Shown in pieces: positions 1,701-23,582 of a DNA stretch of 32,822 nt (within the stretch, counting starts at the first letter, position 1; the number at the start of each line of letters is the position of its first letter). The translations under genes were made by a program, and so were the position numbers. Below the pieces are notes generated by a model. The model did not search any database and was not told where the DNA came from. It saw only the letters and a list, made by a program, of their open reading frames with translations. This stretch comes from Okamejei kenojei (taxonomy: Eukaryota), in contig JAVHYY010000873.1 in the NCBI GenBank assembly GCA_035221665.1, forward strand, positions 1 to 32,822, written 5' to 3'.

Positions 1701-3589
1701 TATGGGGGACGAGTATAACGGGAGCTGTCCTGTGCGGTATGGCTGCCCAGCCTGCAGCTGTCCTTTGTTTCTCTCTTTTTTTTTTTAATTTTTTAGTTAG
1801 TTGAGTTTTTTTTTTTTTCCGGAGTCCTAAGCCTTTTTTTTTTTGTGGGGGTGGGGGGGAAACTGCTTTCCTAGGGTCCCTACCTGGTCGGGAGGGGCAT
1901 CTTTTCTTTTCTCCGGGCTGGCAACCCGTCGACGCGTCCCTCGCGGCCTATCCAGCGGGGCCTGGACGGCGTTTCCCGGGGGGGCCCGCCCATAAACAAG
2001 ACGCTTCGGCGTGGGGCACAGTAACTGGAGCGCCGGTGACTGCGGCTGAACTCGCGGAGCTGGCGGGACATGGTTTGGCGGCGGCGGCTCTGAACTTCAA
2101 TCAACTTATAAAAAAACGTCGGGGGGCCTGGGATCTCTCGGCGAGATCGCCAGTGTGGAGCGCCAACATCCTTGCCTGGCGTCGGAAGCCGTGTTCTCCC
2201 AGCAAGGAAAGCGGCCGTTACAGGCACCCCGAGTCTCCAGACGCCCGGCGGAGAAGGGCCTAGAACATCGGCCCCCGTAGCAGCGACTGCGGAGGCCTCA
2301 GTAGGCCCGACTGTGGGTGAACTGGGGATGGGGTCTGGACTTTGTGCCTCCCCTCATAATGGGAGCCATTGTGGAGGGATGTTTTTTTTTATGGTTATTG
2401 TTAAATTCTTGAATGTTGTGTTACATGCTGCAGATTAATCCTTCCGATTCCTATTTTGTTTTCCATCCATCAGTAGCATTGCAAAGCGAGCCGTTCAGNN
2501 NNNNNNNNNNNNNNNNNNNNNNNNNNNNNNNNNNNNNNNNNNNNNNNNNNNNNNNNNNNNNNNNNNNNNNNNNNNNNNNNNNNNNNNNNNNNNNNNNNNN
2601 NNNNNNNNNNNNNNNNNNNNNNNNNNNNNNNNNNNNNNNNNNNNNNNNNNNNNNNNNNNNNNNNNNNNNNNNNNNNNNNNNNNNNNNNNNNNNNNNNNNN
2701 NNNNNNNNNNNNNNNNNNNNNNNNNNNNNNNNNNNNNNNNNNNNNNNNNNNNNNNNNNNNNNNNNNNNNNNNNNNNNNNNNNNNNNNNNNNNNNNNNNNN
2801 NNNNNNNNNNNNNNNNNNNNNNNNNNNNNNNNNNNNNNNNNNNNNNNNNNNNNNNNNNNNNNNNNNNNNNNNNNNNNNNNNGGGGGGGGGGCGCGCGACA
2901 CATATCTTGGGGCTGGGCGCACACAACCGCAAGGCATCGCCCGGGGGCCCCTGTGGACCGTAACTGCCTTGGTTTGGTGACCAGACTCCGAACTCCACAA
3001 CGGCAGCTTCGTCCGCCCCGAATCCCGAATTGGCCCGTTTGTGGGGACTTTCATCAGCCGTCGGGGGCTTCAACATTGGGAAACCTCGCAGCGGTTTGAT
3101 TTTAAGCCGCGGCGGGTGGCGAAAGGCCCCGCGAACGGGCCGATTCACCCCTCATAATCACCCCCTTAGAAAGCGTCTGATAAAGTCGGGATTGCAAAAC
3201 ATGTCCCACCTCTCAAAGCATGGGGGAGGAGGGGGGGGGGGCCCCCACCAGGATTATCCGCCCATGCATGTTGGCACGTCAGTGGTCTTCAAGAGGCTGG
3301 TCGCTGGATTTTATTTGCCGTGCAAATGGGGCGATTCGTTTTAAACTTCTGTCACATCTGCAGAGGCGGGGCTCGGCAAAGATGCGACGTCTTCACAAAG
3401 GTGGGTGTCTTCGCGCACCGCACTGACACCTGGGGAGCAAGGAAGAGACGGGATGATGCAGCCACAAGCACAAGGCAGCAGCAGTCCAGTATTAGCCGCA
3501 AAACCTCCGCGTTACATTCCCCAGAGTCCGCTTGGTGGTAGATGCCCGTCTGTAACGTGCGCTCTGGTTAATTATCTTTGGAACGTACT

Positions 3590-7166: not shown

Positions 7167-7253
7167 CTGAAGACATATCAGCAGCCGACACATCTGGAAG
7201 GGTAATGGGTCGACTCTGGTTCAGCCCAAATTGTGAGTCACGGTTCTGGTTCA
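7167..7253 (-). CDS. WB: Probable cytoplasmic exon 5 of the beta chain gene
   Basis: Unique island between repeats. Acceptor ttatctttctccag, donor CAG|GTAACC, 87 nt, phase 1-1, open frame VNQNRDSQFGLNQSRPITLPDVSAADMSS. Confidence 0.65.
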
Positions 7254-11540: not shown

Positions 11541-11656
11541 CAATAGACAGGGTAGATAGTCAGAACCTGCAAATTGTGACATTAGCAAGTGACCGAGACA
11601 AGATTAGAAAGGAAAACTTTTCCTAGACTGACGAGGACATGCAAAAATGTTCCTAC

Positions 11657-11761
11657 CTTTCCATCTCATGACTCCTCCCAATACAGCAATCAGAATACCG
11701 ACTAATCCAGTCATTATTCCAACCACATATCCATAGACTGGTACGTTTTGATTCTGGGGAA
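11657..11761 (-). CDS. WB: MHC W-category-like beta chain, exon 4 (connecting peptide/transmembrane)
   Basis: Acceptor ttttttttctccag, donor G|GTAGGA, 105 nt, phase 1-1. Encodes VPQNQNVPVYGYVVGIMTGLVGILIAVLGGVMRWK: Gly-patterned TM helix followed by basic stop-transfer residues. Not in the ORF track. Confidence 0.88.
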
Positions 11762-16482: not shown

Positions 16483-16767
16483 CCCAAACTGCAGTCAGGT
16501 TGTCCGGTATGCTACTGTGTGTGACTTGGCAGGAATAGGTGTCGCCTACTCTGCTGGCGTCAACGGTAAGCTGTAGCCGCATCTGGAACGTCCCGTCAAC
16601 GTTGGCCAGAACGTTGCTCCGCAGCACCTCTCGGTCGATGTCTTTGCCGTTCTGCAGCCAGGTGGTATTGATGTCCCGCGGGTAAAACCCATCCACTCTG
16701 CAGGTCAGGACCAAGGGATGCCCGTGCGCAGTTGGATGCCTGGAGGTTATCGTGATCGCAGGCTTCG
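16483..16767 (-). CDS. WB: MHC W-category-like beta chain, exon 3 (beta2 Ig C1-set domain, class I alpha3-like)
   Basis: Acceptor tttcctgtccacttcag, donor G|GTAAGG, 285 nt, phase 1-1. Canonical C1 motifs LTCRVDGFYPRDINTTW, DGTFQ and YSCQVTHSS. Confidence 0.95.
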
Positions 16768-16921
16768 CTGAAGTGGACAGGAAAAAAAACACAGAGTGTA
16801 AACATGCTCGGCTGTGTCAGGATAATGAATGCCAGCGTGATTTAAGGTATTGGCTTAGTGATACTGGCCCTTCCGCACCGACCAGCGTTCCCTGCACATT
16901 AACACTAGTATTGCCCATTTT

Positions 16922-18650
16922 AGAAACAGAGTAACACAGAAAATAGGTGCAGGAGGAGGCCATTTGGCCCCTCGAGCCAGCACCGCCATTCAATGTGATC
17001 ATGGCTGATCGTCCGCTATCAATAACCCGTGCCTGCCTTCTCCCCATATCTCTTGACTCCACTAGCCCCTAGAGCTCTATCCGATGATGGACTGGGCAGT
17101 TCAATTTACACAAACTGAACCGGCACCGCCATTCATTGTGATCATGGCTGATCATCCCCTATCAATAATAACCTGTGTCTGCCCTCTCCCCATATCCCTT
17201 GACTCCACTAGCCCCTAGAGCTCTATCTAACTCTCTCTTAAATCCATCCAGTGACTTGGCCTCCACTGCCCTCTGTGGCAGGGAACTCCACAAATTCACA
17301 ACTCTCAGAGTAAAAAAGTTTTTTCTCACCTCAGTCTTAAATGGCCTCCCCTTTATTCTAAGACTGTGCGGCCCCTGGTTCTGGACTCACCCAACATTGG
17401 GAACATTTTTCCTGCATCTAGCTTGTCCAGTCCTTTTATAATTTTATATGTTTCTATAAGATTCCCCCTCATCCTTCTAAACTCCAGTGAATACAAGCCT
17501 AGTCTTTTCAATCTTTCCTCATATGACAGTCCCGCCATCCCAGGGATCAATCTCGTGAACCGACGCTGCACTGCCTCAATCACAAGGATGTCCTTCCTCA
17601 AATTAGGAGACCAAAACTGTACACAATACTCCAGATGTGGTCTCACCAGAGCCCTATACAACTGCAGAAGAACCTCTTTACTCCTGTACTGAAATCCTCT
17701 TGTTATGAAGGCCAACATGCCACTAGCTTTCTTCACTGCCTGCTGTACCGGCACGCCAACTTTCAGTGACTGGTGTACAAGGACACCCAGGTCTCGCTGT
17801 AACTCCCCCTTACCTAACCTAACCCCATTGAGATAATAATCTGCCCCCTTGTTTTTGCCGCCAAAGTGGATAACCTCACATTTATCTATATTATACTGCA
17901 TTTGCCACGCATCTGCCCACTCACTCAACCTGTCCAGGTCCCCATGCAACCTCCTAACATCCTCTTCACAGTGAGTTTTGTTTCCTTCTGTTGTCCTATG
18001 AAAGTTTCCCAATCCTCTGGCTTCCGGCTACTCTTTGCTGTGTTATACATCTTTTCTTTTAGTTTTATTCTATTCCTAACTTCTCTTGTCAGCCACGGTT
18101 GCCTCCTACTCCCCTTAGAATCTTTTTTCCTTTTTGGAATGAAATGATCCTGTGTCTACCGGATTATGCCCAGAAATTCCTGCCATTGCTGTTCCACCGT
18201 CATTCCTGCTAATATCCCTTTCCAGTCTACATTGGCCAGCTCCTCTCTCATGCCTTCATAATCCCCTTTGTTCAGCTGCATCACTGCCACTTCCGATTTA
18301 ACCTTCTCCTTCTCAAACTGCAGATTAAAACTAATCATATTATGATCACTACCTCCAAGAGGTTCCTTTGCCTCGAGTTCTCTTATCAAATTTGGATCAT
18401 TGGACAACACTGAATCCAGAATTGCCTTTTCTCTGGTTGGCTCCATTACAAACTGCTCTAAGAATCCATCTCGGAGGCAATCTACAGACTCTATCTTGGG
18501 GTCTGGAATCAACCTGATTTTCCAAGTCTACCTGCATATTGAAATCCCCCATCACCACAGTGGCATTGCCTTTGTTACATGCCAGTTTTAACTCCTGCTG
18601 CAACTTACACCCTACATCCAGGCTACTATTTGGGGGTCTGTAGATAACAC
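16922..18650 (-). mobile_element. CR1 LINE, internally deleted (endonuclease part 17972-18650 fused to the RT C-terminal part and duplicated 3' ends)
   Basis: GVIYRPPNS, VVMGDFN and GGSDHN (APE endonuclease); WADAWQMQYNIDKC...HLEYCVQFWSP. Confidence 0.92.
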
Positions 18651-18734
18651 CAAAACCTGCACTGATGTATAGCACTTGGGTCAACATGAGTTGTTTTTAA
18701 AATGTGCTATACAAATAAAATTGACTGGCTGACT

Positions 18735-18895
18735 GACCCTACACATACTTGGCACAATGTTTTACATTTGCACCAAGCCAATTAGGCTTTGCTTGTCTTT
18801 GGAGTGCAGGAGGAAACCGATGATCTTGGAGAAATCCCAAGCAGGTCATGGGGAGAGCGTTCAAACTCTGCGCAAACATGTAGCCCGTAGTCAGG
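18735..18895 (-). mobile_element. SINE fragment
   Basis: Same family as 3836-4100. Confidence 0.55.
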
Positions 18896-19127
18896 CTTCA
18901 TCCTGGAGAGGGTGAAGCAGAGTAAGAGAGAGCGCCTTTGCAAGAAGCTGGATGGGAGTAGGTCTAGTCCGGATATCACTTGTGAGGACATCTCGGATGC
19001 CCTAGAATGGACTACTCCTCCCTCCCTGCCTCTTGCAGAGACCCTGCTCATCATCTCCGTCAGCCTCCGTACCGCACGCGCGTTGTCCACCAACATTTCC
19101 GCCACCTTCAGCCAGGCAACACCTTAC

Positions 19128-19385
19128 CAGTCTCAGCTCGGATGGCTTCTTTAACCATGTGCGAGACCAACGGCATGCGACGGATGTATCGGGCAACGTT
19201 TTTGACAACTCTCACATTTTTGTTCAGTCCTTCGGCATATGGCTCCGCCAGGGGGTGTTTGGCTACAAACTTGTTCGAGGAGTATTCGAAGCGCATGAAC
19301 TCCTCGCCATCGAATGCAAACCGCAGGACCGTCAGGGAGAAATCATCACCAGTGCAAGAAAAGATCACTTGGCAAACGTGCATCC
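19128..19385 (-). CDS. WB: MHC W-category-like beta chain, exon 2 (beta1 membrane-distal domain, class I alpha2-like)
   Basis: Acceptor ttttctgctcaccag, donor G|GTAAGG, 258 nt, phase 1-1. Encodes GMHVCQVIFSC...RFAFDGEEFMRFEYSSNKFVAKHPLAEPYAEGLNKN...ARYIRR. Aligns by eye to class I alpha2 (GSHTVQRMYGC, QYAYDGKDY) and to class II beta1. Confidence 0.88.
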
Positions 19386-19492
19386 CTGGTGAGCAGAAAA
19401 ATTAATAATCGATGTTCACCACATGCCCTCTTCACCCCACCCTCTTCCCCCCCCTTACCTGCTGCCATCTTCATCCCCCACATAAGATAGAT

Positions 19493-20315
19493 TCTTGAGG
19501 GAGTGCAGCGTAGGTTTACAAGGTTAATACCCGGGATGGCGGGACTGTCATATGCTGAGAGGATGGAGCAGCTGGGCTTGTGCACTCTGGAGTTTAGAAG
19601 GATGAGAGGGTATCTCATTGAAACATATAAGATCGTTAAGGGTTTGGACACGCTGGAGGCAGGAAACATGTTCCCGATGTTGGGGGAGTCCAGAACCAGG
19701 GGCCACACACAGTTTAAGAATAAGGAGTAAAGCCATTTAGAACGGAGACAAGGAGACACTTTCTCTAGCAGAGAGTGGCGAGTCTGTGGAATTCGGGCGG
19801 TGGAGGTCGGTTCTTTGGATGCTTTCAAGAGAGAGCTAGATAGGGCTCTTAAAGATAGCGGAGTCAGGGGATATGGGGAGCAGGCAGGAACGGGGGTACC
19901 CGATTGGGGACGATCAGCCCGTGATCACATTGAATGATTGTTCCCGATGTTGGGGAAGTCCAGGACAAGGGGTCACAGCTTAACGATAAGGGGGAAATCC
20001 TTTAAGACCGTGATGAGAAAGACTTTCTTCACACAGAGAGTGGTGAGTCTCTGGAACTCTCTGCCCACAGAGGGTAGTTGAGGCCAGTTCATTGGCTATA
20101 TTTAAGATGTGAGTTGGATGTGGCCCTTGTGGCTAAGGGGATCAGAGGGTATGGAGAGAAGGCAGGTACGGGATACTGAGTTGGATGATCAGCCATGATC
20201 ATATTGAATGGCGGTGCAGCTCGAAGGGCTGAATGGCCTACTCCCTGCACCTAATTTCTATGTTTCTATGTTTCTATGAATGGTGGTGCTGGCTCGAAGG
20301 GTCAAATGGCCCACT
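19493..20315 (+). mobile_element. Two tandem CR1 3' fragments
   Basis: QRRFTRLIPGMAGLSY...TRGH; second copy from about 19936; (CTATGTTT)n tail. Confidence 0.9.
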
Positions 20316-20359
20316 CCGTCACCCATGCCCTCTTTCACCCCCCCCCTCCAACCTCTTAT

Positions 20360-20815
20360 AAAGTCAAGTCAAGTCAACCTTGTCACATATACACATACAA
20401 GATGAGCAGTGAAATGAAAGTGGCAATGCCTGCGGACTGTGCAAAAACAACAGAACAAATTAGATCAGAGCCAGTATTTACATTTTCTTAAGGCGCAACA
20501 CAACGGTAAATTAGTCTCTGGTGAGATTGGAGTTTGCAGTCCTGACGGCCTGTGGGAAGAAACTCCGTCTCATCCTCTCTGTTTTCACAGCGTGACAGTG
20601 GAGGCGCTTGCCTGACTGTAGCAGCTGGAACAGTACGTTGCTGGGGTGGTAGGGGTCCCCATAATGTTGCTGGCTCTGGATCTGCACCTCCTGGTGTGTA
20701 GGTGCTGCGGGGGGGGGGGGGGGGGGGGGGATGTGGTTCCCATAGTGCGTTCGGCCGAACGCACTACTCTCCGCAGAGCCTTCCTGTCCTGGGCAGAGCA
20801 GTTCCAAAACCAGAT
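20360..20815 (-). mobile_element. Rex1/Babar-like LINE 3' fragment
   Basis: Inverted relative of 7290-7914 (QDRKALRRVVRSAERT; RRSFFPQAVR). Confidence 0.8.
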
Positions 20816-20817
20816 CA

Positions 20818-22615
20818 ACCTCACGCCTCTAACCCTCTCCCTCAAACCCGATCCTCCATCTAAATTCACACTTCTCCTCTCCCTCAGCCCCTTCAACCTC
20901 CTCATCTCTCCACCCTCCAAGCAAAACTCCATCGACTCATACTCTGCCCACGCGCCACCTCTCCCTCCAACCTCTCACTCTCCATCTCCCCCTCAACCCT
21001 CAAACCCTCTCTCCCTCAACCCTCCTCTCTCAACCCGCCCAACCCATCAACCCTTCCACTCCTCTCAACCTCTCTCCCTCACCCTCAACTCTCCACTCAA
21101 ACTCCTCTCCTCAACCTCCTCACCCTCCCTCAACCCTCCTCTCCCTCCCTCCCTCCCCTCCTCTCTCCTCAACCTCTCCTCCTCCCTCAACCCTCCTCTC
21201 CCTCAACCCTCCTCTCAACCCTCCTCTCCCTCCCTCAACCCTCTCTCCCTCACCTCCTCTCCCTCAACCCTCCTCTCCCTTTCAACCCTCCTCTCCCACC
21301 CTCCCCCTCTCCCTCAACCCTCCACTGGCCTCAACCCTCCTCTCCCCTCACCCTCCATCATCCCTCAACCCTCCTCTCCACCCTCCTCTCCCTCAACCCT
21401 CCCATCTCCCTCAACCCTCCTCTCCCTCAACCCTCCTCTCCCTCAACCCCACTCCTCAACCCTCCATCCCACGCTCCCCTCCTCTCCCTCCACCAATCTC
21501 CTCCCTCCCTCTCCCTCAACCCTCCTCTCCCTCCCACCCTCCACCCTCCCTCCCTCACCTCAACCCTCCTCTCCTCAACCCCATCCCCTCCTCTCCTCTC
21601 CCTCAAACCCTCCCTCTCCCTCAACCCTCTCCCTCTCCCTCAACCCTCTCTCTCCCTAACCCTCCTCTCCTCAACCCTCCTCTCCCTCAAACCCTCCTCT
21701 CCCTCAACCCTCCTCTCTCCCTCAACCCTCCTCTCCCTCAAACCCTCCTCTCCCTCAACCCTCCCCCCTCAACCCTCCTTCCCCTCCTCTCCCTCAACCC
21801 TCTCCCTTCCTCTCCCTCAACCTTCTCCTCTCCCCTCAACCCTCCCTCTCCCTCAAACCTCATCCCTCCACCCTCATCTCCCTCCACTCCACTCTCTTCA
21901 TCCCTTCACTCCCCTCTCCTCAACCCTCCTCCCTCAATCCTCCAATCTCTCATCCCTCGTCTCCCTAACCCTCATCCTCCTCCCTCCAACCCTCCTCCTC
22001 CCTCAAACCCTCTCCCCTCCACCCACTCAACCCCTCCTCTCCCTCAACCCCTCCTCTCCCTCCAGCCCCCAACCATCTCCCTCCAACCCTCCTCTCCCTC
22101 AACCCTCCATTCCCTCAACCCTCCTCTCCCTCTCAACCCTCCTCTCCCTCAACCCTCCGACCCTCAACGCCTCCCGTAAACCCCTCTCTCCCTCCCTCCC
22201 TCAACCCTCTCTCTCCTCCTCCAACCATCCTCTCCTCAACCCTCCCTCCTCAACCCTCCTCTCCCTCAACCCTCCCTCCCTCTCCCTCAAACCCTCTCCC
22301 CCTCTCCCTCCCTCAACCCTCCTCCATTCCCTCAACCCCATCTCTCCCTCCCTCAACCTCCTCTCCCTCACTTCCATTCCCTCAACCCTCCTCTCCCTCA
22401 ACCCTCCACTCTCCCTCAACAAAAAACCCTCCGCTCCCTCCAAACCCTCCTCTCTCCCTCCACCCTCCTCTCAACCCTTCCTCTCCCCTCCCCTCTTCTC
22501 CCTCCACCTCCTCTCCCTCCACCCTCCCTCTCCTCTCAAAAACCCTCCCCTTCTCAACCTCCCTGCTCCCTCAACCCTCCTCTCCCTCAACCCTCCTCTC
22601 CCTCAACCCTCCTCC
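20818..22615. repeat. Low-complexity minisatellite (CCCTCAACCCTCCTCT)n in intron 1
   Basis: Degenerate ~16-bp C/T-rich unit over about 1.8 kb. Confidence 0.9.
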
Positions 22616-22619
22616 TCAC

Positions 22620-22731
22620 CCAGAGCCGCCGAGTCGAGCATGAAGAAGAGGAAGAGCAGAGAGAGGAGGAGGCCGCCGCCGCCGCCATTCCCCCGCGGCC
22701 GTCGCCATCGCCGCCGTCCGTTGCCCCTCAT
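22620..22731 (-). CDS. WB: MHC W-category-like beta chain, exon 1 (signal peptide)
   Basis: ATG at 22731 gives MRGNGRRRWRRPRGNGGGGGLLLSLLFLFFMLDSAAL: basic N-region, hydrophobic core, small-residue end. Ends at a phase-1 donor G|GTGAGG in a CpG-rich context. Confidence 0.8.
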
Positions 22732-22751: not shown

Positions 22752-23582
22752 GGGTCGCTGATTGGCCGAGCGGGGGCTTTTCCACCCAGCAACAGCCCCC
22801 GGGTGGTCGCTGATTGCCGAACACAACAGCCCCCGGGTGGTCCTTGATTGGCCGAACGGGGTCTTTTCCACCCAGCAACAGCCCCCGGGTGGTCCTTGAT
22901 TGGCCGAACGGGGTCTTTTCCACCCAGCAACAGCCCCCGGGTGGTCCTTGATTGGCCGAACGAGGGTCTTTTCCACCCAGCAACAGCCCCCGGGTGGTCC
23001 TTGATTGGCCGAGAACGGGGGCTTTTTTCCCCCGTCCACCCAACAACAGCCCCCGGGTGGTCCTTGATTGGCCCGAACGAGGTCTTTTCACCCAGCAAAA
23101 CAGCCCCCGGGTAGGTCCTTGATTGGCCGAACGGGGGTTTTTTTTCACCTGGCAACAGCCCCGGGTGGTCGCTTGATTGGGTGGCCGAGCGAGGGTATTT
23201 TCCACCCAGCAACAGCCCCCGGGTGGTCCTTGATTGGCCGAACGAGGTCTTTTCCACCCAGCAACAGCCCCCGGGTGGTCCTTGATTGGCCGAACGGGGA
23301 CTTTTTCACCTGGCAACAGCCCCCGGGTGGTCCTTGATTGGCCGAACGGGGTCTTTTCCACCCAGCAACAGCCCCCGGGTGGTCCTTGATTGGCCGAACG
23401 AGGTCTTTTCCACCCAGCAACAGCCCCCGGGTGGTCCTTGATTGGCCGAGCGGGGGCTTTTTTTCCACCCAGCAACACCCCGGTGGTCTGATTGGCCCCG
23501 GGGGCTAGTCCTTGATTGGCCGAACGAGGGCTTTTCCACCCAGCAACAGCCCCCGGGTGGTCCTTGATTGGCTGAACGGGGG
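22752..23582. repeat. 52-bp minisatellite (about 16 units) with X1-like (CCCAGCAACAG) and Y/CCAAT-box (GATTGG) motifs; probable promoter region
   Basis: Unit ccccgggtggtccttgattggccgaacggggtcttttccacccagcaacagc recurs at 22831, 22883, 22935 and onward. It starts about 20 bp upstream of the leader ATG. Confidence 0.9.

What the first reader, a model, noticed from the sequence alone, without database searches (positions are those of the whole stretch)
16483..19385. Class I interface signatures in a two-domain beta-type chain
By-eye alignment to HLA-A2 numbering: the distal domain has H93, Q96, C101, A117, D119, G120 and E at 122, which include class I alpha2 residues that contact b2m. The Ig domain has DGTFQ (class I alpha3 type) rather than DWTFQ (the conserved class II beta2 Trp). 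The P235 equivalent is Ala (LANVDG), so the match is incomplete. No alpha1 exon is visible in the gap-free interval 19386-22619, which contains almost only repeats.
Basis: partly seen in the sequence, partly recalled or inferred. Interest (0 to 1): 0.8.

Follow-up and report, generated by a model that had tools for sequence, protein, structure and literature searches.

The report
Skate W-category MHC beta-chain gene

Summary
On the minus strand lie a beta1-like exon (19128-19385) and a C1-set Ig exon (16483-16767).

The reading is right but not new. These residues define the W-category MHC of Okamura et al. 2021 (PMC8713811). The gene is a WB_DS1-like beta chain. Its beta1 exon is 65-74% and its beta2 exon 79-83% identical to annotated skate proteins. 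Its beta1 falls in a WB_DS1 clade (support 100/99) that includes the paper's great white shark sequence. It lies head-to-head with a WA_DS10-like alpha1 exon (31395-31658, + strand), the pairing the paper reports.

I extended the model to six coding exons (22731 down to 3341), 282 aa without the cassette exon. Spliced RNA contigs from four runs end exactly at the exon 2 borders. No alpha1 exon was found in intron 1.

One unusual point is that Ala replaces the Pro at position 57/235, which 15 of 15 relatives keep.

The scan had already noted W-category genes on this window and on other pieces of this genome.

The parts
22620..22731 (-). WB exon 1: start codon and signal peptide (MRGNGRRRW...FMLDSAAL, last base starts the Gly codon)
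   Evidence: Translation. The donor GT is at 22619-22618. Phase 1 fits exon 2. The leader is 49-68% identical to the leaders of skate orthologues P0026-P0029.
19386..22619 (-). Intron 1: repeats only, no alpha1-type exon
   Evidence: No N. Tandem array at 20997-22615. Repeat-level contig depth. tblastn with class I and WB proteins gave only noise, best E 0.14.
19128..19385 (-). WB exon 2: beta1 (membrane-distal) domain, 86 codons, with Q5, A23, G26, E28 (= class I Q96, A117, G120, 122)
   Evidence: RNA contigs of four runs lie exactly on 19128-19384/6.
16483..16767 (-). WB exon 3: beta2 C1-set Ig domain, 95 codons, with LANVDGTFQ (Ala at position 57/P235, Gly at position 61)
   Evidence: An RNA contig piece ends at 16767 (table 3: place 16737 lies 31 letters from the end).
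11657..11761 (-). WB exon 4: connecting peptide, transmembrane helix with the Gly pattern, start of the tail (PQNQNVPVYGYVVGIMTGLVGILIAVLGGVMRWK)
   Evidence: tblastn of orthologues gave E down to 7e-10. Identity to skates is 76-91%. Its 105 nt plus the 285 nt of exon 3 equal the 390 contig letters that precede exon 2.
7167..7253 (-). WB cassette exon (87 nt, 29 codons, phase 1 to phase 1), probably alternatively spliced
   Evidence: tblastn with the extra stretch of Amblyraja radiata isoform X2 gave E=1.5e-6 and 58% identity. Shark and ray isoform pairs differ by a 29-aa stretch at this spot.
3341..3429 (-). WB last coding exon with stop codon (VSAVREDTHLCEDVASLPSPASADVTEV*)
   Evidence: It is 71% identical to the tails of P0027 and P0028. 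An AATAAA follows about 30 nt downstream.
31395..31658 (+). Alpha1 exon of the partner gene (WA_DS10-like), head-to-head with WB; its alpha2 exon lies beyond the window's end
   Evidence: Translation. By eye it is about 70% identical to the little skate WA_DS10-like sequence printed in the paper's supplement.

Best explanation
This is the beta-chain gene (WB, lineage WB_DS1-like) of a W-category MHC molecule in a skate.

Shown here: it is an intact gene of six coding exons with class II beta architecture. It is transcribed and spliced. It is orthologous to named WB_DS1 sequences. It lies head-to-head with a WA_DS10-like alpha-chain gene.

Inferred from the family as published: the protein pairs with that alpha chain, not with beta2-microglobulin. 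Beta1 and the partner's alpha1 build the platform. The partner's Ig domain is beta2-microglobulin-like and puts its Trp61 into a pleat under the platform. That pleat is lined by the class I-type residues of beta1 (Q5, A23, G26, E28 here). The class I signatures therefore exist because the partner looks like beta2-microglobulin.

The beta2 domain has Gly where class II needs Trp, so it packs against the platform in the class I manner. The molecule is probably a nonclassical surface heterodimer with an unknown ligand. The beta1 disulfide is missing, as in the whole WB_DS1 lineage.
For: - Architecture and open frame. The exon lengths 112+258+285+105+89 sum to 849 nt, which is 282 codons plus stop, with all junctions in phase 1.
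- Transcription and splicing: contigs of four runs from two studies cover exon 2 exactly from border to border as letters 391-647/649. The unique intron beside it has almost no depth.
- Relatives: only 8 proteins in 1.84 billion reach E<=0.001 with beta1. [quoted passage not shown] One class I alpha2 and one class II beta1 follow at nearly equal scores.
- Skate orthologues: 65-74% (beta1), 79-83% (beta2) and 76-91% (TM) identity.
- The beta1 tree places the window in the WB_DS1 clade with 100/99 support.
- Hallmark columns: Q6, A32 and G35 are present in 15 of 15 relatives and in the window. The window has G61, as do 13 of 15 relatives.
- The family definition, the head-to-head WA_DS10L/WB_DS1L pairs in sharks, and the WA/WB-dependent surface expression in salamander are in PMC8713811.
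- The little skate WA_DS10-like alpha2 printed in the supplement has Y8, L37 and L-S-F-S-E-D-W.
Against: - Pro57 (class I P235), a named W-category/class I feature, is Ala here, alone among 16 sequences.
- Position 37 (class I D122) is Glu, not Asp, though this position varies within WB_DS1.
- The partner's alpha2 exon is outside the window, so its Trp61 could not be checked on this DNA.
- The RNA contigs differ from the window at 7 of 257 bases in exon 2. They may come from another allele or a paralogue, and W-category genes were noted on other pieces of this genome.
- Pairing, surface expression and ligand are untested in any cartilaginous fish.
- The model of the beta1 domain alone was only moderate (pLDDT 70). 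Foldseek matched it to class II beta chains weakly (E about 7e-4) and VIA-align gave only unspecific matches.
Confidence: 0.9

Rival explanations
1. The window's copy is a decaying or functionally relaxed allele or paralogue of WB_DS1. The transcripts seen would come from a better-conserved copy.
For: Pro57 is replaced by Ala only here. The beta2 end branch is 0.13, against 0.03-0.045 in three other skates. The RNA contigs differ at 7 of 257 bases in exon 2. At three sites (F29I and V57E in beta1, H10R in beta2) they carry the residue found in other skates. Other W-category genes are noted on other pieces of this genome.
Against: All six exons are open, with canonical splice sites, a start codon, a stop codon and a poly(A) signal. 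Most window-specific changes are conservative (V/I). The invariant core residues are kept.
Confidence: 0.1
2. It is a beta-type chain that pairs with beta2-microglobulin itself, making a light-chain-dependent two-domain molecule, instead of pairing with an alpha chain.
For: Beta1 carries the class I residues that contact Trp60 of beta2-microglobulin. The Ig exon's best single-domain PDB matches are beta2-microglobulin and class I alpha3.
Against: Without an alpha1 half there is no complete platform for beta2-microglobulin to support. A WA_DS10-like alpha1 exon lies head-to-head in the window. In the little skate that lineage's alpha2 has the beta2-microglobulin-type Trp61, Phe57 and Leu55. Salamander WB reached the surface only with WA.
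Confidence: 0.03
3. It is a divergent conventional nonclassical class II beta chain of the DO/DM kind, whose class I-like residues arose by convergence.
For: Pfam MHC_II_beta scores above its cut-off. Foldseek ranks class II beta chains first for the beta1 model. NCBI names the orthologues 'class II ... beta chain-like'.
Against: The Trp in beta2 that is invariant in conventional class II is Gly here. No conventional class II beta except one frog fusion protein reaches E<=0.001 in the exhaustive search, at the same level as a class I alpha2. The gene is orthologous to sequences the 2021 paper assigns to W-category.
Confidence: 0.03

Closest known systems
W-category MHC beta chain, lineage WB_DS1-like (Okamura, Dijkstra et al., PNAS 2021, PMC8713811); nearest tool-provided proteins are Amblyraja radiata XP isoforms (P0027, P0029), a 282-aa Logan-derived skate protein (P0028) and Rhinoraja longicauda (P0026)
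   Same: The exon and domain order are the same. Q6, A32, G35 and G61 are present. There is no beta1 disulfide partner. The TM Gly pattern, the alternative 29-aa cassette after the TM exon, the tail motif LCEDV..LPSP and the head-to-head WA_DS10-like neighbour are shared. Identity is 65-74% in beta1 and 79-83% in beta2.
   Different: Ala replaces Pro57, and there is an extra Cys at beta1 position 4. The beta2 terminal branch is three to four times longer than in the other skates. No identical protein is in the searched collections. The paper had only a partial little skate sequence, without leader, TM or tail.
Classical and nonclassical MHC class I heavy chain, alpha2 and alpha3 domains
   Same: H93, Q96, C101, A117, D119 and G120 are present, with an acidic residue at 122. 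DGTFQ has Gly239. These are the residues that face beta2-microglobulin Trp60 and the platform.
   Different: There is no alpha1 exon. There is a 3-residue deletion between C101 and A117 and no C164 partner. Ala sits at P235. The TM and tail are of the class II beta type.
Conventional MHC class II beta chain (for example chicken BLB2, HLA-DR/DQ/DP beta)
   Same: The gene architecture, the beta1 fold class (best Foldseek matches), the motif FDGEEF.RF....G.FVA...L.EP.AE..N, the C1-set beta2 and the Gly-rich TM helix are shared.
   Different: It lacks the invariant Trp of DWTFQ. It has A-x-D-G where class II has I/F-Y-N-R/Q. It also lacks the C15-C79 disulfide.

Membership tests
W-category MHC, WB chain | Class II beta-type architecture: leader, one distal domain, one C1-set domain, CP/TM/CY, and no alpha1 exon | tested here: met
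   Exon model. tblastn finds no alpha1-like exon in the window. RNA contigs stop at the exon 2 borders.
W-category MHC, WB chain | Beta1 residues Q6, A32, G35 (class I Q96, A117, G120) | tested here: met
   Q5, A23 and G26 align to these columns by Pfam, BLASTP and MAFFT. They are invariant in 15 of 15 WB_DS1 relatives.
W-category MHC, WB chain | Beta1 D37 (class I D122) | tested here: inconclusive
   The window has Glu. Among 15 relatives the column holds E (7), D (4), T (2), V (1) and A (1). The acidic character is kept here, but the column is not fixed in this lineage.
W-category MHC, WB chain | Beta2 position 61 is not Trp and is mostly Gly (class I G239) | tested here: met
   The window has DGTFQ. 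Gly is present in 13 of 15 relatives and Arg in two Mobula proteins.
W-category MHC, WB chain | Beta2 Pro57 (class I P235) | tested here: not met
   The window has Ala (codon GCC at 16604-16606). All 15 relatives have Pro. This is one substitution in a gene that is otherwise clearly orthologous. It lowers the completeness of the motif, not the orthology.
W-category MHC, WB chain | Orthology to sequences named WB in the defining paper | tested here: met
   [quoted passage not shown] By eye the window is about four-fifths identical to the paper's little skate WB_DS1-like.
W-category MHC, WB chain | Head-to-head pairing with a WA gene | tested here: met
   A + strand alpha1 exon at 31395-31658 matches the little skate WA_DS10-like sequence. 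The match was made by eye only, because the supplement text has no reference id.
W-category MHC, WB chain | Partner WA alpha2 with W61, L55, F/Y57, Y8 and no W37 | not testable with these tools
The little skate orthologue in the supplement has these residues.
W-category MHC, WB chain | WA/WB heterodimer at the cell surface | not testable with these tools
   This has been shown only for tiger salamander in PMC8713811.
Conventional MHC class II beta chain | Invariant Trp in the beta2 DWTFQ motif | tested here: not met
   Gly is at that column.
Conventional MHC class II beta chain | Beta1 disulfide (C15-C79) | tested here: not met
   C10 aligns with C15/C101, but there is no Cys in the helix half of beta1. 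The same holds in the other WB_DS1 sequences.
MHC class I heavy chain | An alpha1 domain in the same chain | tested here: not met
   The leader exon joins beta1 in phase. There is no alpha1-like exon in intron 1 or elsewhere on this strand.

The most novel reading that the evidence does not exclude
In this skate the WB_DS1 gene, or this allele of it, has changed its Ig-domain contact surface. Pro57 became Ala, a second loop Pro became Ala, and the beta2 branch is three to four times longer than in other skates. A second, more conservative allele or paralogue is expressed. This would mean that W-category chains are polymorphic or are diversifying at the class I-type interface, which would contradict the reported low polymorphism and hint at partner switching.
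Probability: 0.1. Interest if true: 0.5.

Novelty: new member of a known kind. Interest (0 to 1): 0.3.

Why it matters
W-category molecules are the proposed intermediate between MHC class II and class I, and very little has been published on them since 2021. A full search for the term found three relevant papers.

This window gives a complete, transcribed gene model of a WB_DS1-like chain in a skate. The defining paper had only a partial beta1 and beta2 for a skate. The window also shows the chain's head-to-head WA_DS10-like neighbour.

That is useful for annotation, because NCBI calls the orthologues 'class II ... beta chain-like'. It is also useful for choosing constructs for a first WA/WB structure.

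It does not change what is known. The class I interface signature is the family's published hallmark.

Tried and rejected
- Word search with the beta1 exon alone was blank. The length window shuts out full-length relatives, so this means nothing.
- AlphaFold2 of the beta1 exon alone with a 7-row alignment gave only pLDDT 70. Foldseek ranked class II beta chains first at weak E (about 7e-4, TM 0.51). VIA-align against 48,161 chains gave Z of 5.3 or less, with kinetochore and Mediator proteins above MHC chains. A structure-guided residue alignment could therefore not be had this way. The secondary-structure order (strands 4-11, 16-24, 27-35, 38-41, then helices) does put A23, G26 and E28 on the strand 2-strand 3 hairpin, as in class I alpha2.
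- The Ig-domain tree was unresolved, as the 2021 paper also found.
- A first tblastn of the WA alpha1 exon against intron 1 used the wrong frame and is not counted.
- I considered reading exon 4 through its donor (GRNIFACPRQSRKSFPF*), because it faintly resembles shark tails. I rejected it in favour of splicing. The cassette and last exons are in phase and homologous to skate proteins, and the RNA contigs break at the exon 4 end.
Each exon was handled by reference, and frame continuity rests on exon lengths and phases.
- Sequences printed in the paper's supplement were compared by eye only, since they have no reference id.
Full report
**What is there**

The finding covers two exons of a minus-strand gene. 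The distal-domain exon is 19128-19385 and the Ig exon is 16483-16767. Both have AG/GT borders and phase 1.

Pfam calls the Ig exon C1-set (E=3.4e-19). For the distal exon it gives MHC_II_beta (E=4.1e-5, 24.2 bits against a cut-off of 20.9). It also gives MHC_I more weakly (E=0.0056), with query residues 2-56 on profile positions 93-150.

Against solved structures, the distal exon's best matches are chicken class II beta chains (E about 3e-4), followed by class I and class I-like alpha2 domains. The Ig exon matches beta2-microglobulin (45.9 bits) and H-2 alpha3 (about 42 bits) best, as single domains.

Three formal alignments agree with the by-eye register.
- The Pfam MHC_I alignment starts at profile position 93 with the His and ends at 150. 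This implies a net 3-residue deletion.
- BLASTP to a teleost class I protein found by the exhaustive search (P0007, Pfam MHC_I E=3.8e-113) aligns MHVCQVIFSC with VHTVQQIGGC. After a 3-residue gap it aligns AFDGEEF with RYDGEDF. This gives H93, Q96, C101, A117, D119, G120 and Glu at 122.
- phmmer to chicken class II beta1 uses the same columns, where class II has I-Y-N-R-Q-Q.

In the Ig exon, phmmer aligns 'lanvdgtfq' with 'rpagdgtfq' of H-2 alpha3. Gly therefore sits at the class II Trp position and Ala at P235.

**What it is**

Okamura, Dijkstra and colleagues (PNAS 2021, PMC8713811) described the W-category MHC. [quoted passage not shown]
- In WB beta1 these are Q6, A32, G35 and D37, which equal HLA-A2 Q96, A117, G120 and D122.
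- In WB beta2 they are G61 instead of the invariant class II Trp, and P57, which equals P235.
- In WA alpha2 they are a beta2-microglobulin-like Trp61, L55, F/Y57 and Y8, with no Trp37.

[quoted passage not shown] By eye it matches the window's beta1 and beta2 exons at about four residues in five. It also prints a little skate WA_DS10-like sequence whose first residues (KTTLALTFFATDDPSLPDGVLE...) match the + strand exon at 31395-31658 (KATLALTLFTTDDPSLPEGVLE...). In the great white shark the paper reports WA_DS10L and WB_DS1L as a head-to-head pair. This window has the same arrangement.

**Tests with tool-provided sequences**

The word search with the beta1 exon alone was blank. I therefore used the exhaustive search.

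Only 8 of 1.84 billion representatives reach E<=0.001.
- Four are elasmobranch proteins: Mobula hypostoma (2.6e-14), basking/great white shark (9.7e-8 and 4.4e-7) and zebra shark (1.2e-5).
- Two are bacterial repeat proteins, which are noise.
- One is a teleost class I protein, hit in alpha2 (5.4e-4).
- One is a frog fusion model, hit in its class II beta1 part (7.4e-4).

Outside its own lineage, beta1 is therefore about equally far from class I alpha2 and class II beta1.

[quoted passage not shown] A word search with the full-length Mobula protein then brought skate proteins: Amblyraja radiata, Rhinoraja longicauda and a 282-aa protein from a Logan assembly.

| Window exon | Identity to the skate proteins |
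|---|---|
| beta1 | 65-74% |
| beta2 | 79-83% |
| TM | 76-91% |
| leader | 49-68% |
| tail | 71% |

None of these proteins is identical to the window's.

A maximum-likelihood tree of beta1 places the window next to the skates, inside a 16-sequence WB_DS1 clade. That clade is separated from class I alpha2 and the frog beta1 with 100/99 support. The Ig-domain tree is unresolved, as in the paper.

In a column table of 15 relatives:

| Position | In 15 relatives | In the window |
|---|---|---|
| Q6, A32, G35 | invariant | present |
| 37 | E, D, T, V or A | Glu |
| G61 | 13 of 15 | Gly |
| Pro57 | 15 of 15 | Ala, the only exception |

**Gene model**

Using the orthologues I extended the model.

| Exon | Coordinates (minus strand) | Content |
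|---|---|---|
| 1 | 22620-22731 | start codon and signal peptide |
| 2 | 19128-19385 | beta1 |
| 3 | 16483-16767 | beta2 |
| 4 | 11657-11761 | connecting peptide, Gly-rich TM helix |
| cassette | 7167-7253 | 87 nt, optional |
| last | 3341-3429 | tail, stop codon, AATAAA downstream |

All junctions are phase 1. Without the cassette the lengths sum to 849 nt, which is 282 codons plus stop. That is the same length as the Logan-derived skate protein.

Shark, ray and Amblyraja isoform pairs differ by an extra stretch after the TM exon, 29 aa in the sharks and rays and 24 aa in Amblyraja. This fits alternative use of the cassette.

That step was left out, and frame continuity rests on exon lengths and phases.

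**Expression**

Contigs of four runs of the same organism, from two studies, were laid on 16700-22699. In each run one contig lies on exon 2 exactly from 19128 to 19384-19386.
- In three runs this piece is contig letters 391-647/649.
- The 390 letters before it equal exon 3 (285 nt) plus exon 4 (105 nt). Contigs that start right at the exon 4 end fit a branch caused by the alternative cassette. This part is inference, because those letters lay outside the stretch laid.
- In two runs 188 further letters follow on the exon 1 side.
- The unique intron bin 18900-19099 has depth 0-3, against 12-49 for the exon contigs.

These are therefore spliced transcripts.

They differ from the window at 7 of 257 bases in exon 2. 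Of the six differences listed, five change the protein (F22I, F29I, V40I, V57E, H75Q), and one in exon 3 gives H10R. Three of these changes restore residues seen in other skates.

The transcripts may thus come from another allele or from a paralogue. Five replacements to one silent change is not distinguishable from neutral expectation.

A formal alignment did not shift the residues off the interface positions.

No alpha1 exon was found in intron 1.
- The interval has no N.
- It consists of a CT-rich tandem array at 20997-22615 and interspersed repeats.
- tblastn with a class I protein that includes alpha1, and with the WB proteins, gave nothing better than E=0.14.
- Across the whole window, the class I protein hit only exon 2, through its alpha2 copies.
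- Full-length orthologues go from leader straight into beta1.

**How it most likely works**

The molecule is a WA/WB heterodimer. Beta1 and WA alpha1 form the platform. Beta2 has Gly where class II has Trp, so it contacts the platform in the class I manner.

What is shown and what is inferred:
- The gene, its orthology, its splicing and its neighbour are shown here.
- The little skate partner sequence in the supplement has Y8, L37 and L-S-F-S-E-D-W.
- Pairing was shown only for salamander.
- Pairing in this species and the ligand are inferred or unknown.

The beta1 disulfide partner is absent, as in all WB_DS1 sequences. The paper notes that W-category subgroups lack the classical peptide-anchoring sets. 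A nonclassical role is therefore more likely than classical peptide presentation.

**Structure**

- No multimer tool is on hand, and the joined chain was not to be built.
- The beta1 exon alone, with a 7-row alignment, folded at pLDDT 70 into four strands and a broken helix.
- Foldseek ranked class II beta chains first, but weakly.
- VIA-align gave only unspecific matches.

This supports the MHC half-platform fold. It puts A23, G26 and E28 on the strand 2-strand 3 hairpin, but it cannot separate class I from class II packing.

**Novelty and earlier notes of the scan**

The family, the lineage and even its presence in a skate are published. New here are a complete skate gene model, evidence of splicing, the cassette exon and the Ala57 variant.

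The scan's own notes already called this window's gene pair W-category-like (s1-880450). They also list W-category genes on other pieces of this genome (s1-880053, and s1-880182, which another agent filed as WA_DS10-like). I reached the same family independently, through the paper and the searches above.

Noticed in passing
window 22824-23497 (also 22790-22857): There is a tandem array of a 52-bp unit (12.6 copies, 86% matches) directly upstream of the WB start codon. Each unit contains GATTGGCC, a reversed CCAAT that resembles the Y box of MHC promoters. Another first-stage note (s1-880535) covers it.
   Followed up: partly
window 19159, 19214, 19234, 19266, 19299, 19320 and 16737: RNA contigs of four runs differ from the window at these bases. 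Five of the six differences in exon 2 change the protein (H75Q, V57E, V40I, F29I, F22I), and the one in exon 3 gives H10R. Three of the changes restore the residue seen in other skates. This points to a second allele or a paralogue.
   Followed up: partly
window 16604-16606 (minus-strand codon GCC): Ala sits at the position where all 15 compared WB_DS1 relatives and most class I alpha3 domains have Pro (P57/P235). A second loop Pro (position 69 of the exon) is also Ala here only. The beta2 end branch is 0.13, against 0.03-0.045 in other skates.
   Followed up: partly
window 19372-19374 (minus-strand codon for Cys4 of beta1): There is an extra Cys at beta1 position 4 (class I position 95). Other skates have Gly or Val there. 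It lies on the same strand as C10, so it cannot replace the missing disulfide partner.
   Followed up: no
window 7167-7253, minus strand: This is an 87-nt cassette exon between the TM exon and the last exon. It is homologous to the extra stretch of Amblyraja radiata isoform X2. Shark and ray isoform pairs differ by 29 aa at the same spot.
   Followed up: yes
window 29484-29592, + strand: This is a candidate leader exon of the WA gene (MFHGPPRRPPPPSPSSTTPSPLLLLLSLAVARGARS). Only a weak GTTTAA donor gives the phase that the alpha1 exon needs. The stronger GTCAGG donor five bases upstream would run into a stop. N gaps lie on both sides.
   Followed up: no
window 20997-22615: A CT-rich tandem array (units of about 16 and 67 bp, about 1.6 kb) fills the half of intron 1 that lies next to exon 1. 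A similar pyrimidine-rich stretch lies near 27100-29400, between the two genes.
   Followed up: no
window 17353-18687, minus strand: ORFs that look like a non-LTR retrotransposon's reverse transcriptase tail and endonuclease lie in intron 2, in the same direction as the gene. They were read by eye only; no family scan was run. Copies of the same repeat family reach contig depths of 10^5 in the runs laid.
   Followed up: no
window 11628-11656, minus strand: Read through the exon 4 donor, the sequence gives GRNIFACPRQSRKSFPF*. tblastn aligns its start with the shark stretch RGLHACGSQP. This may be chance, or a trace of how the cassette arose.
   Followed up: no
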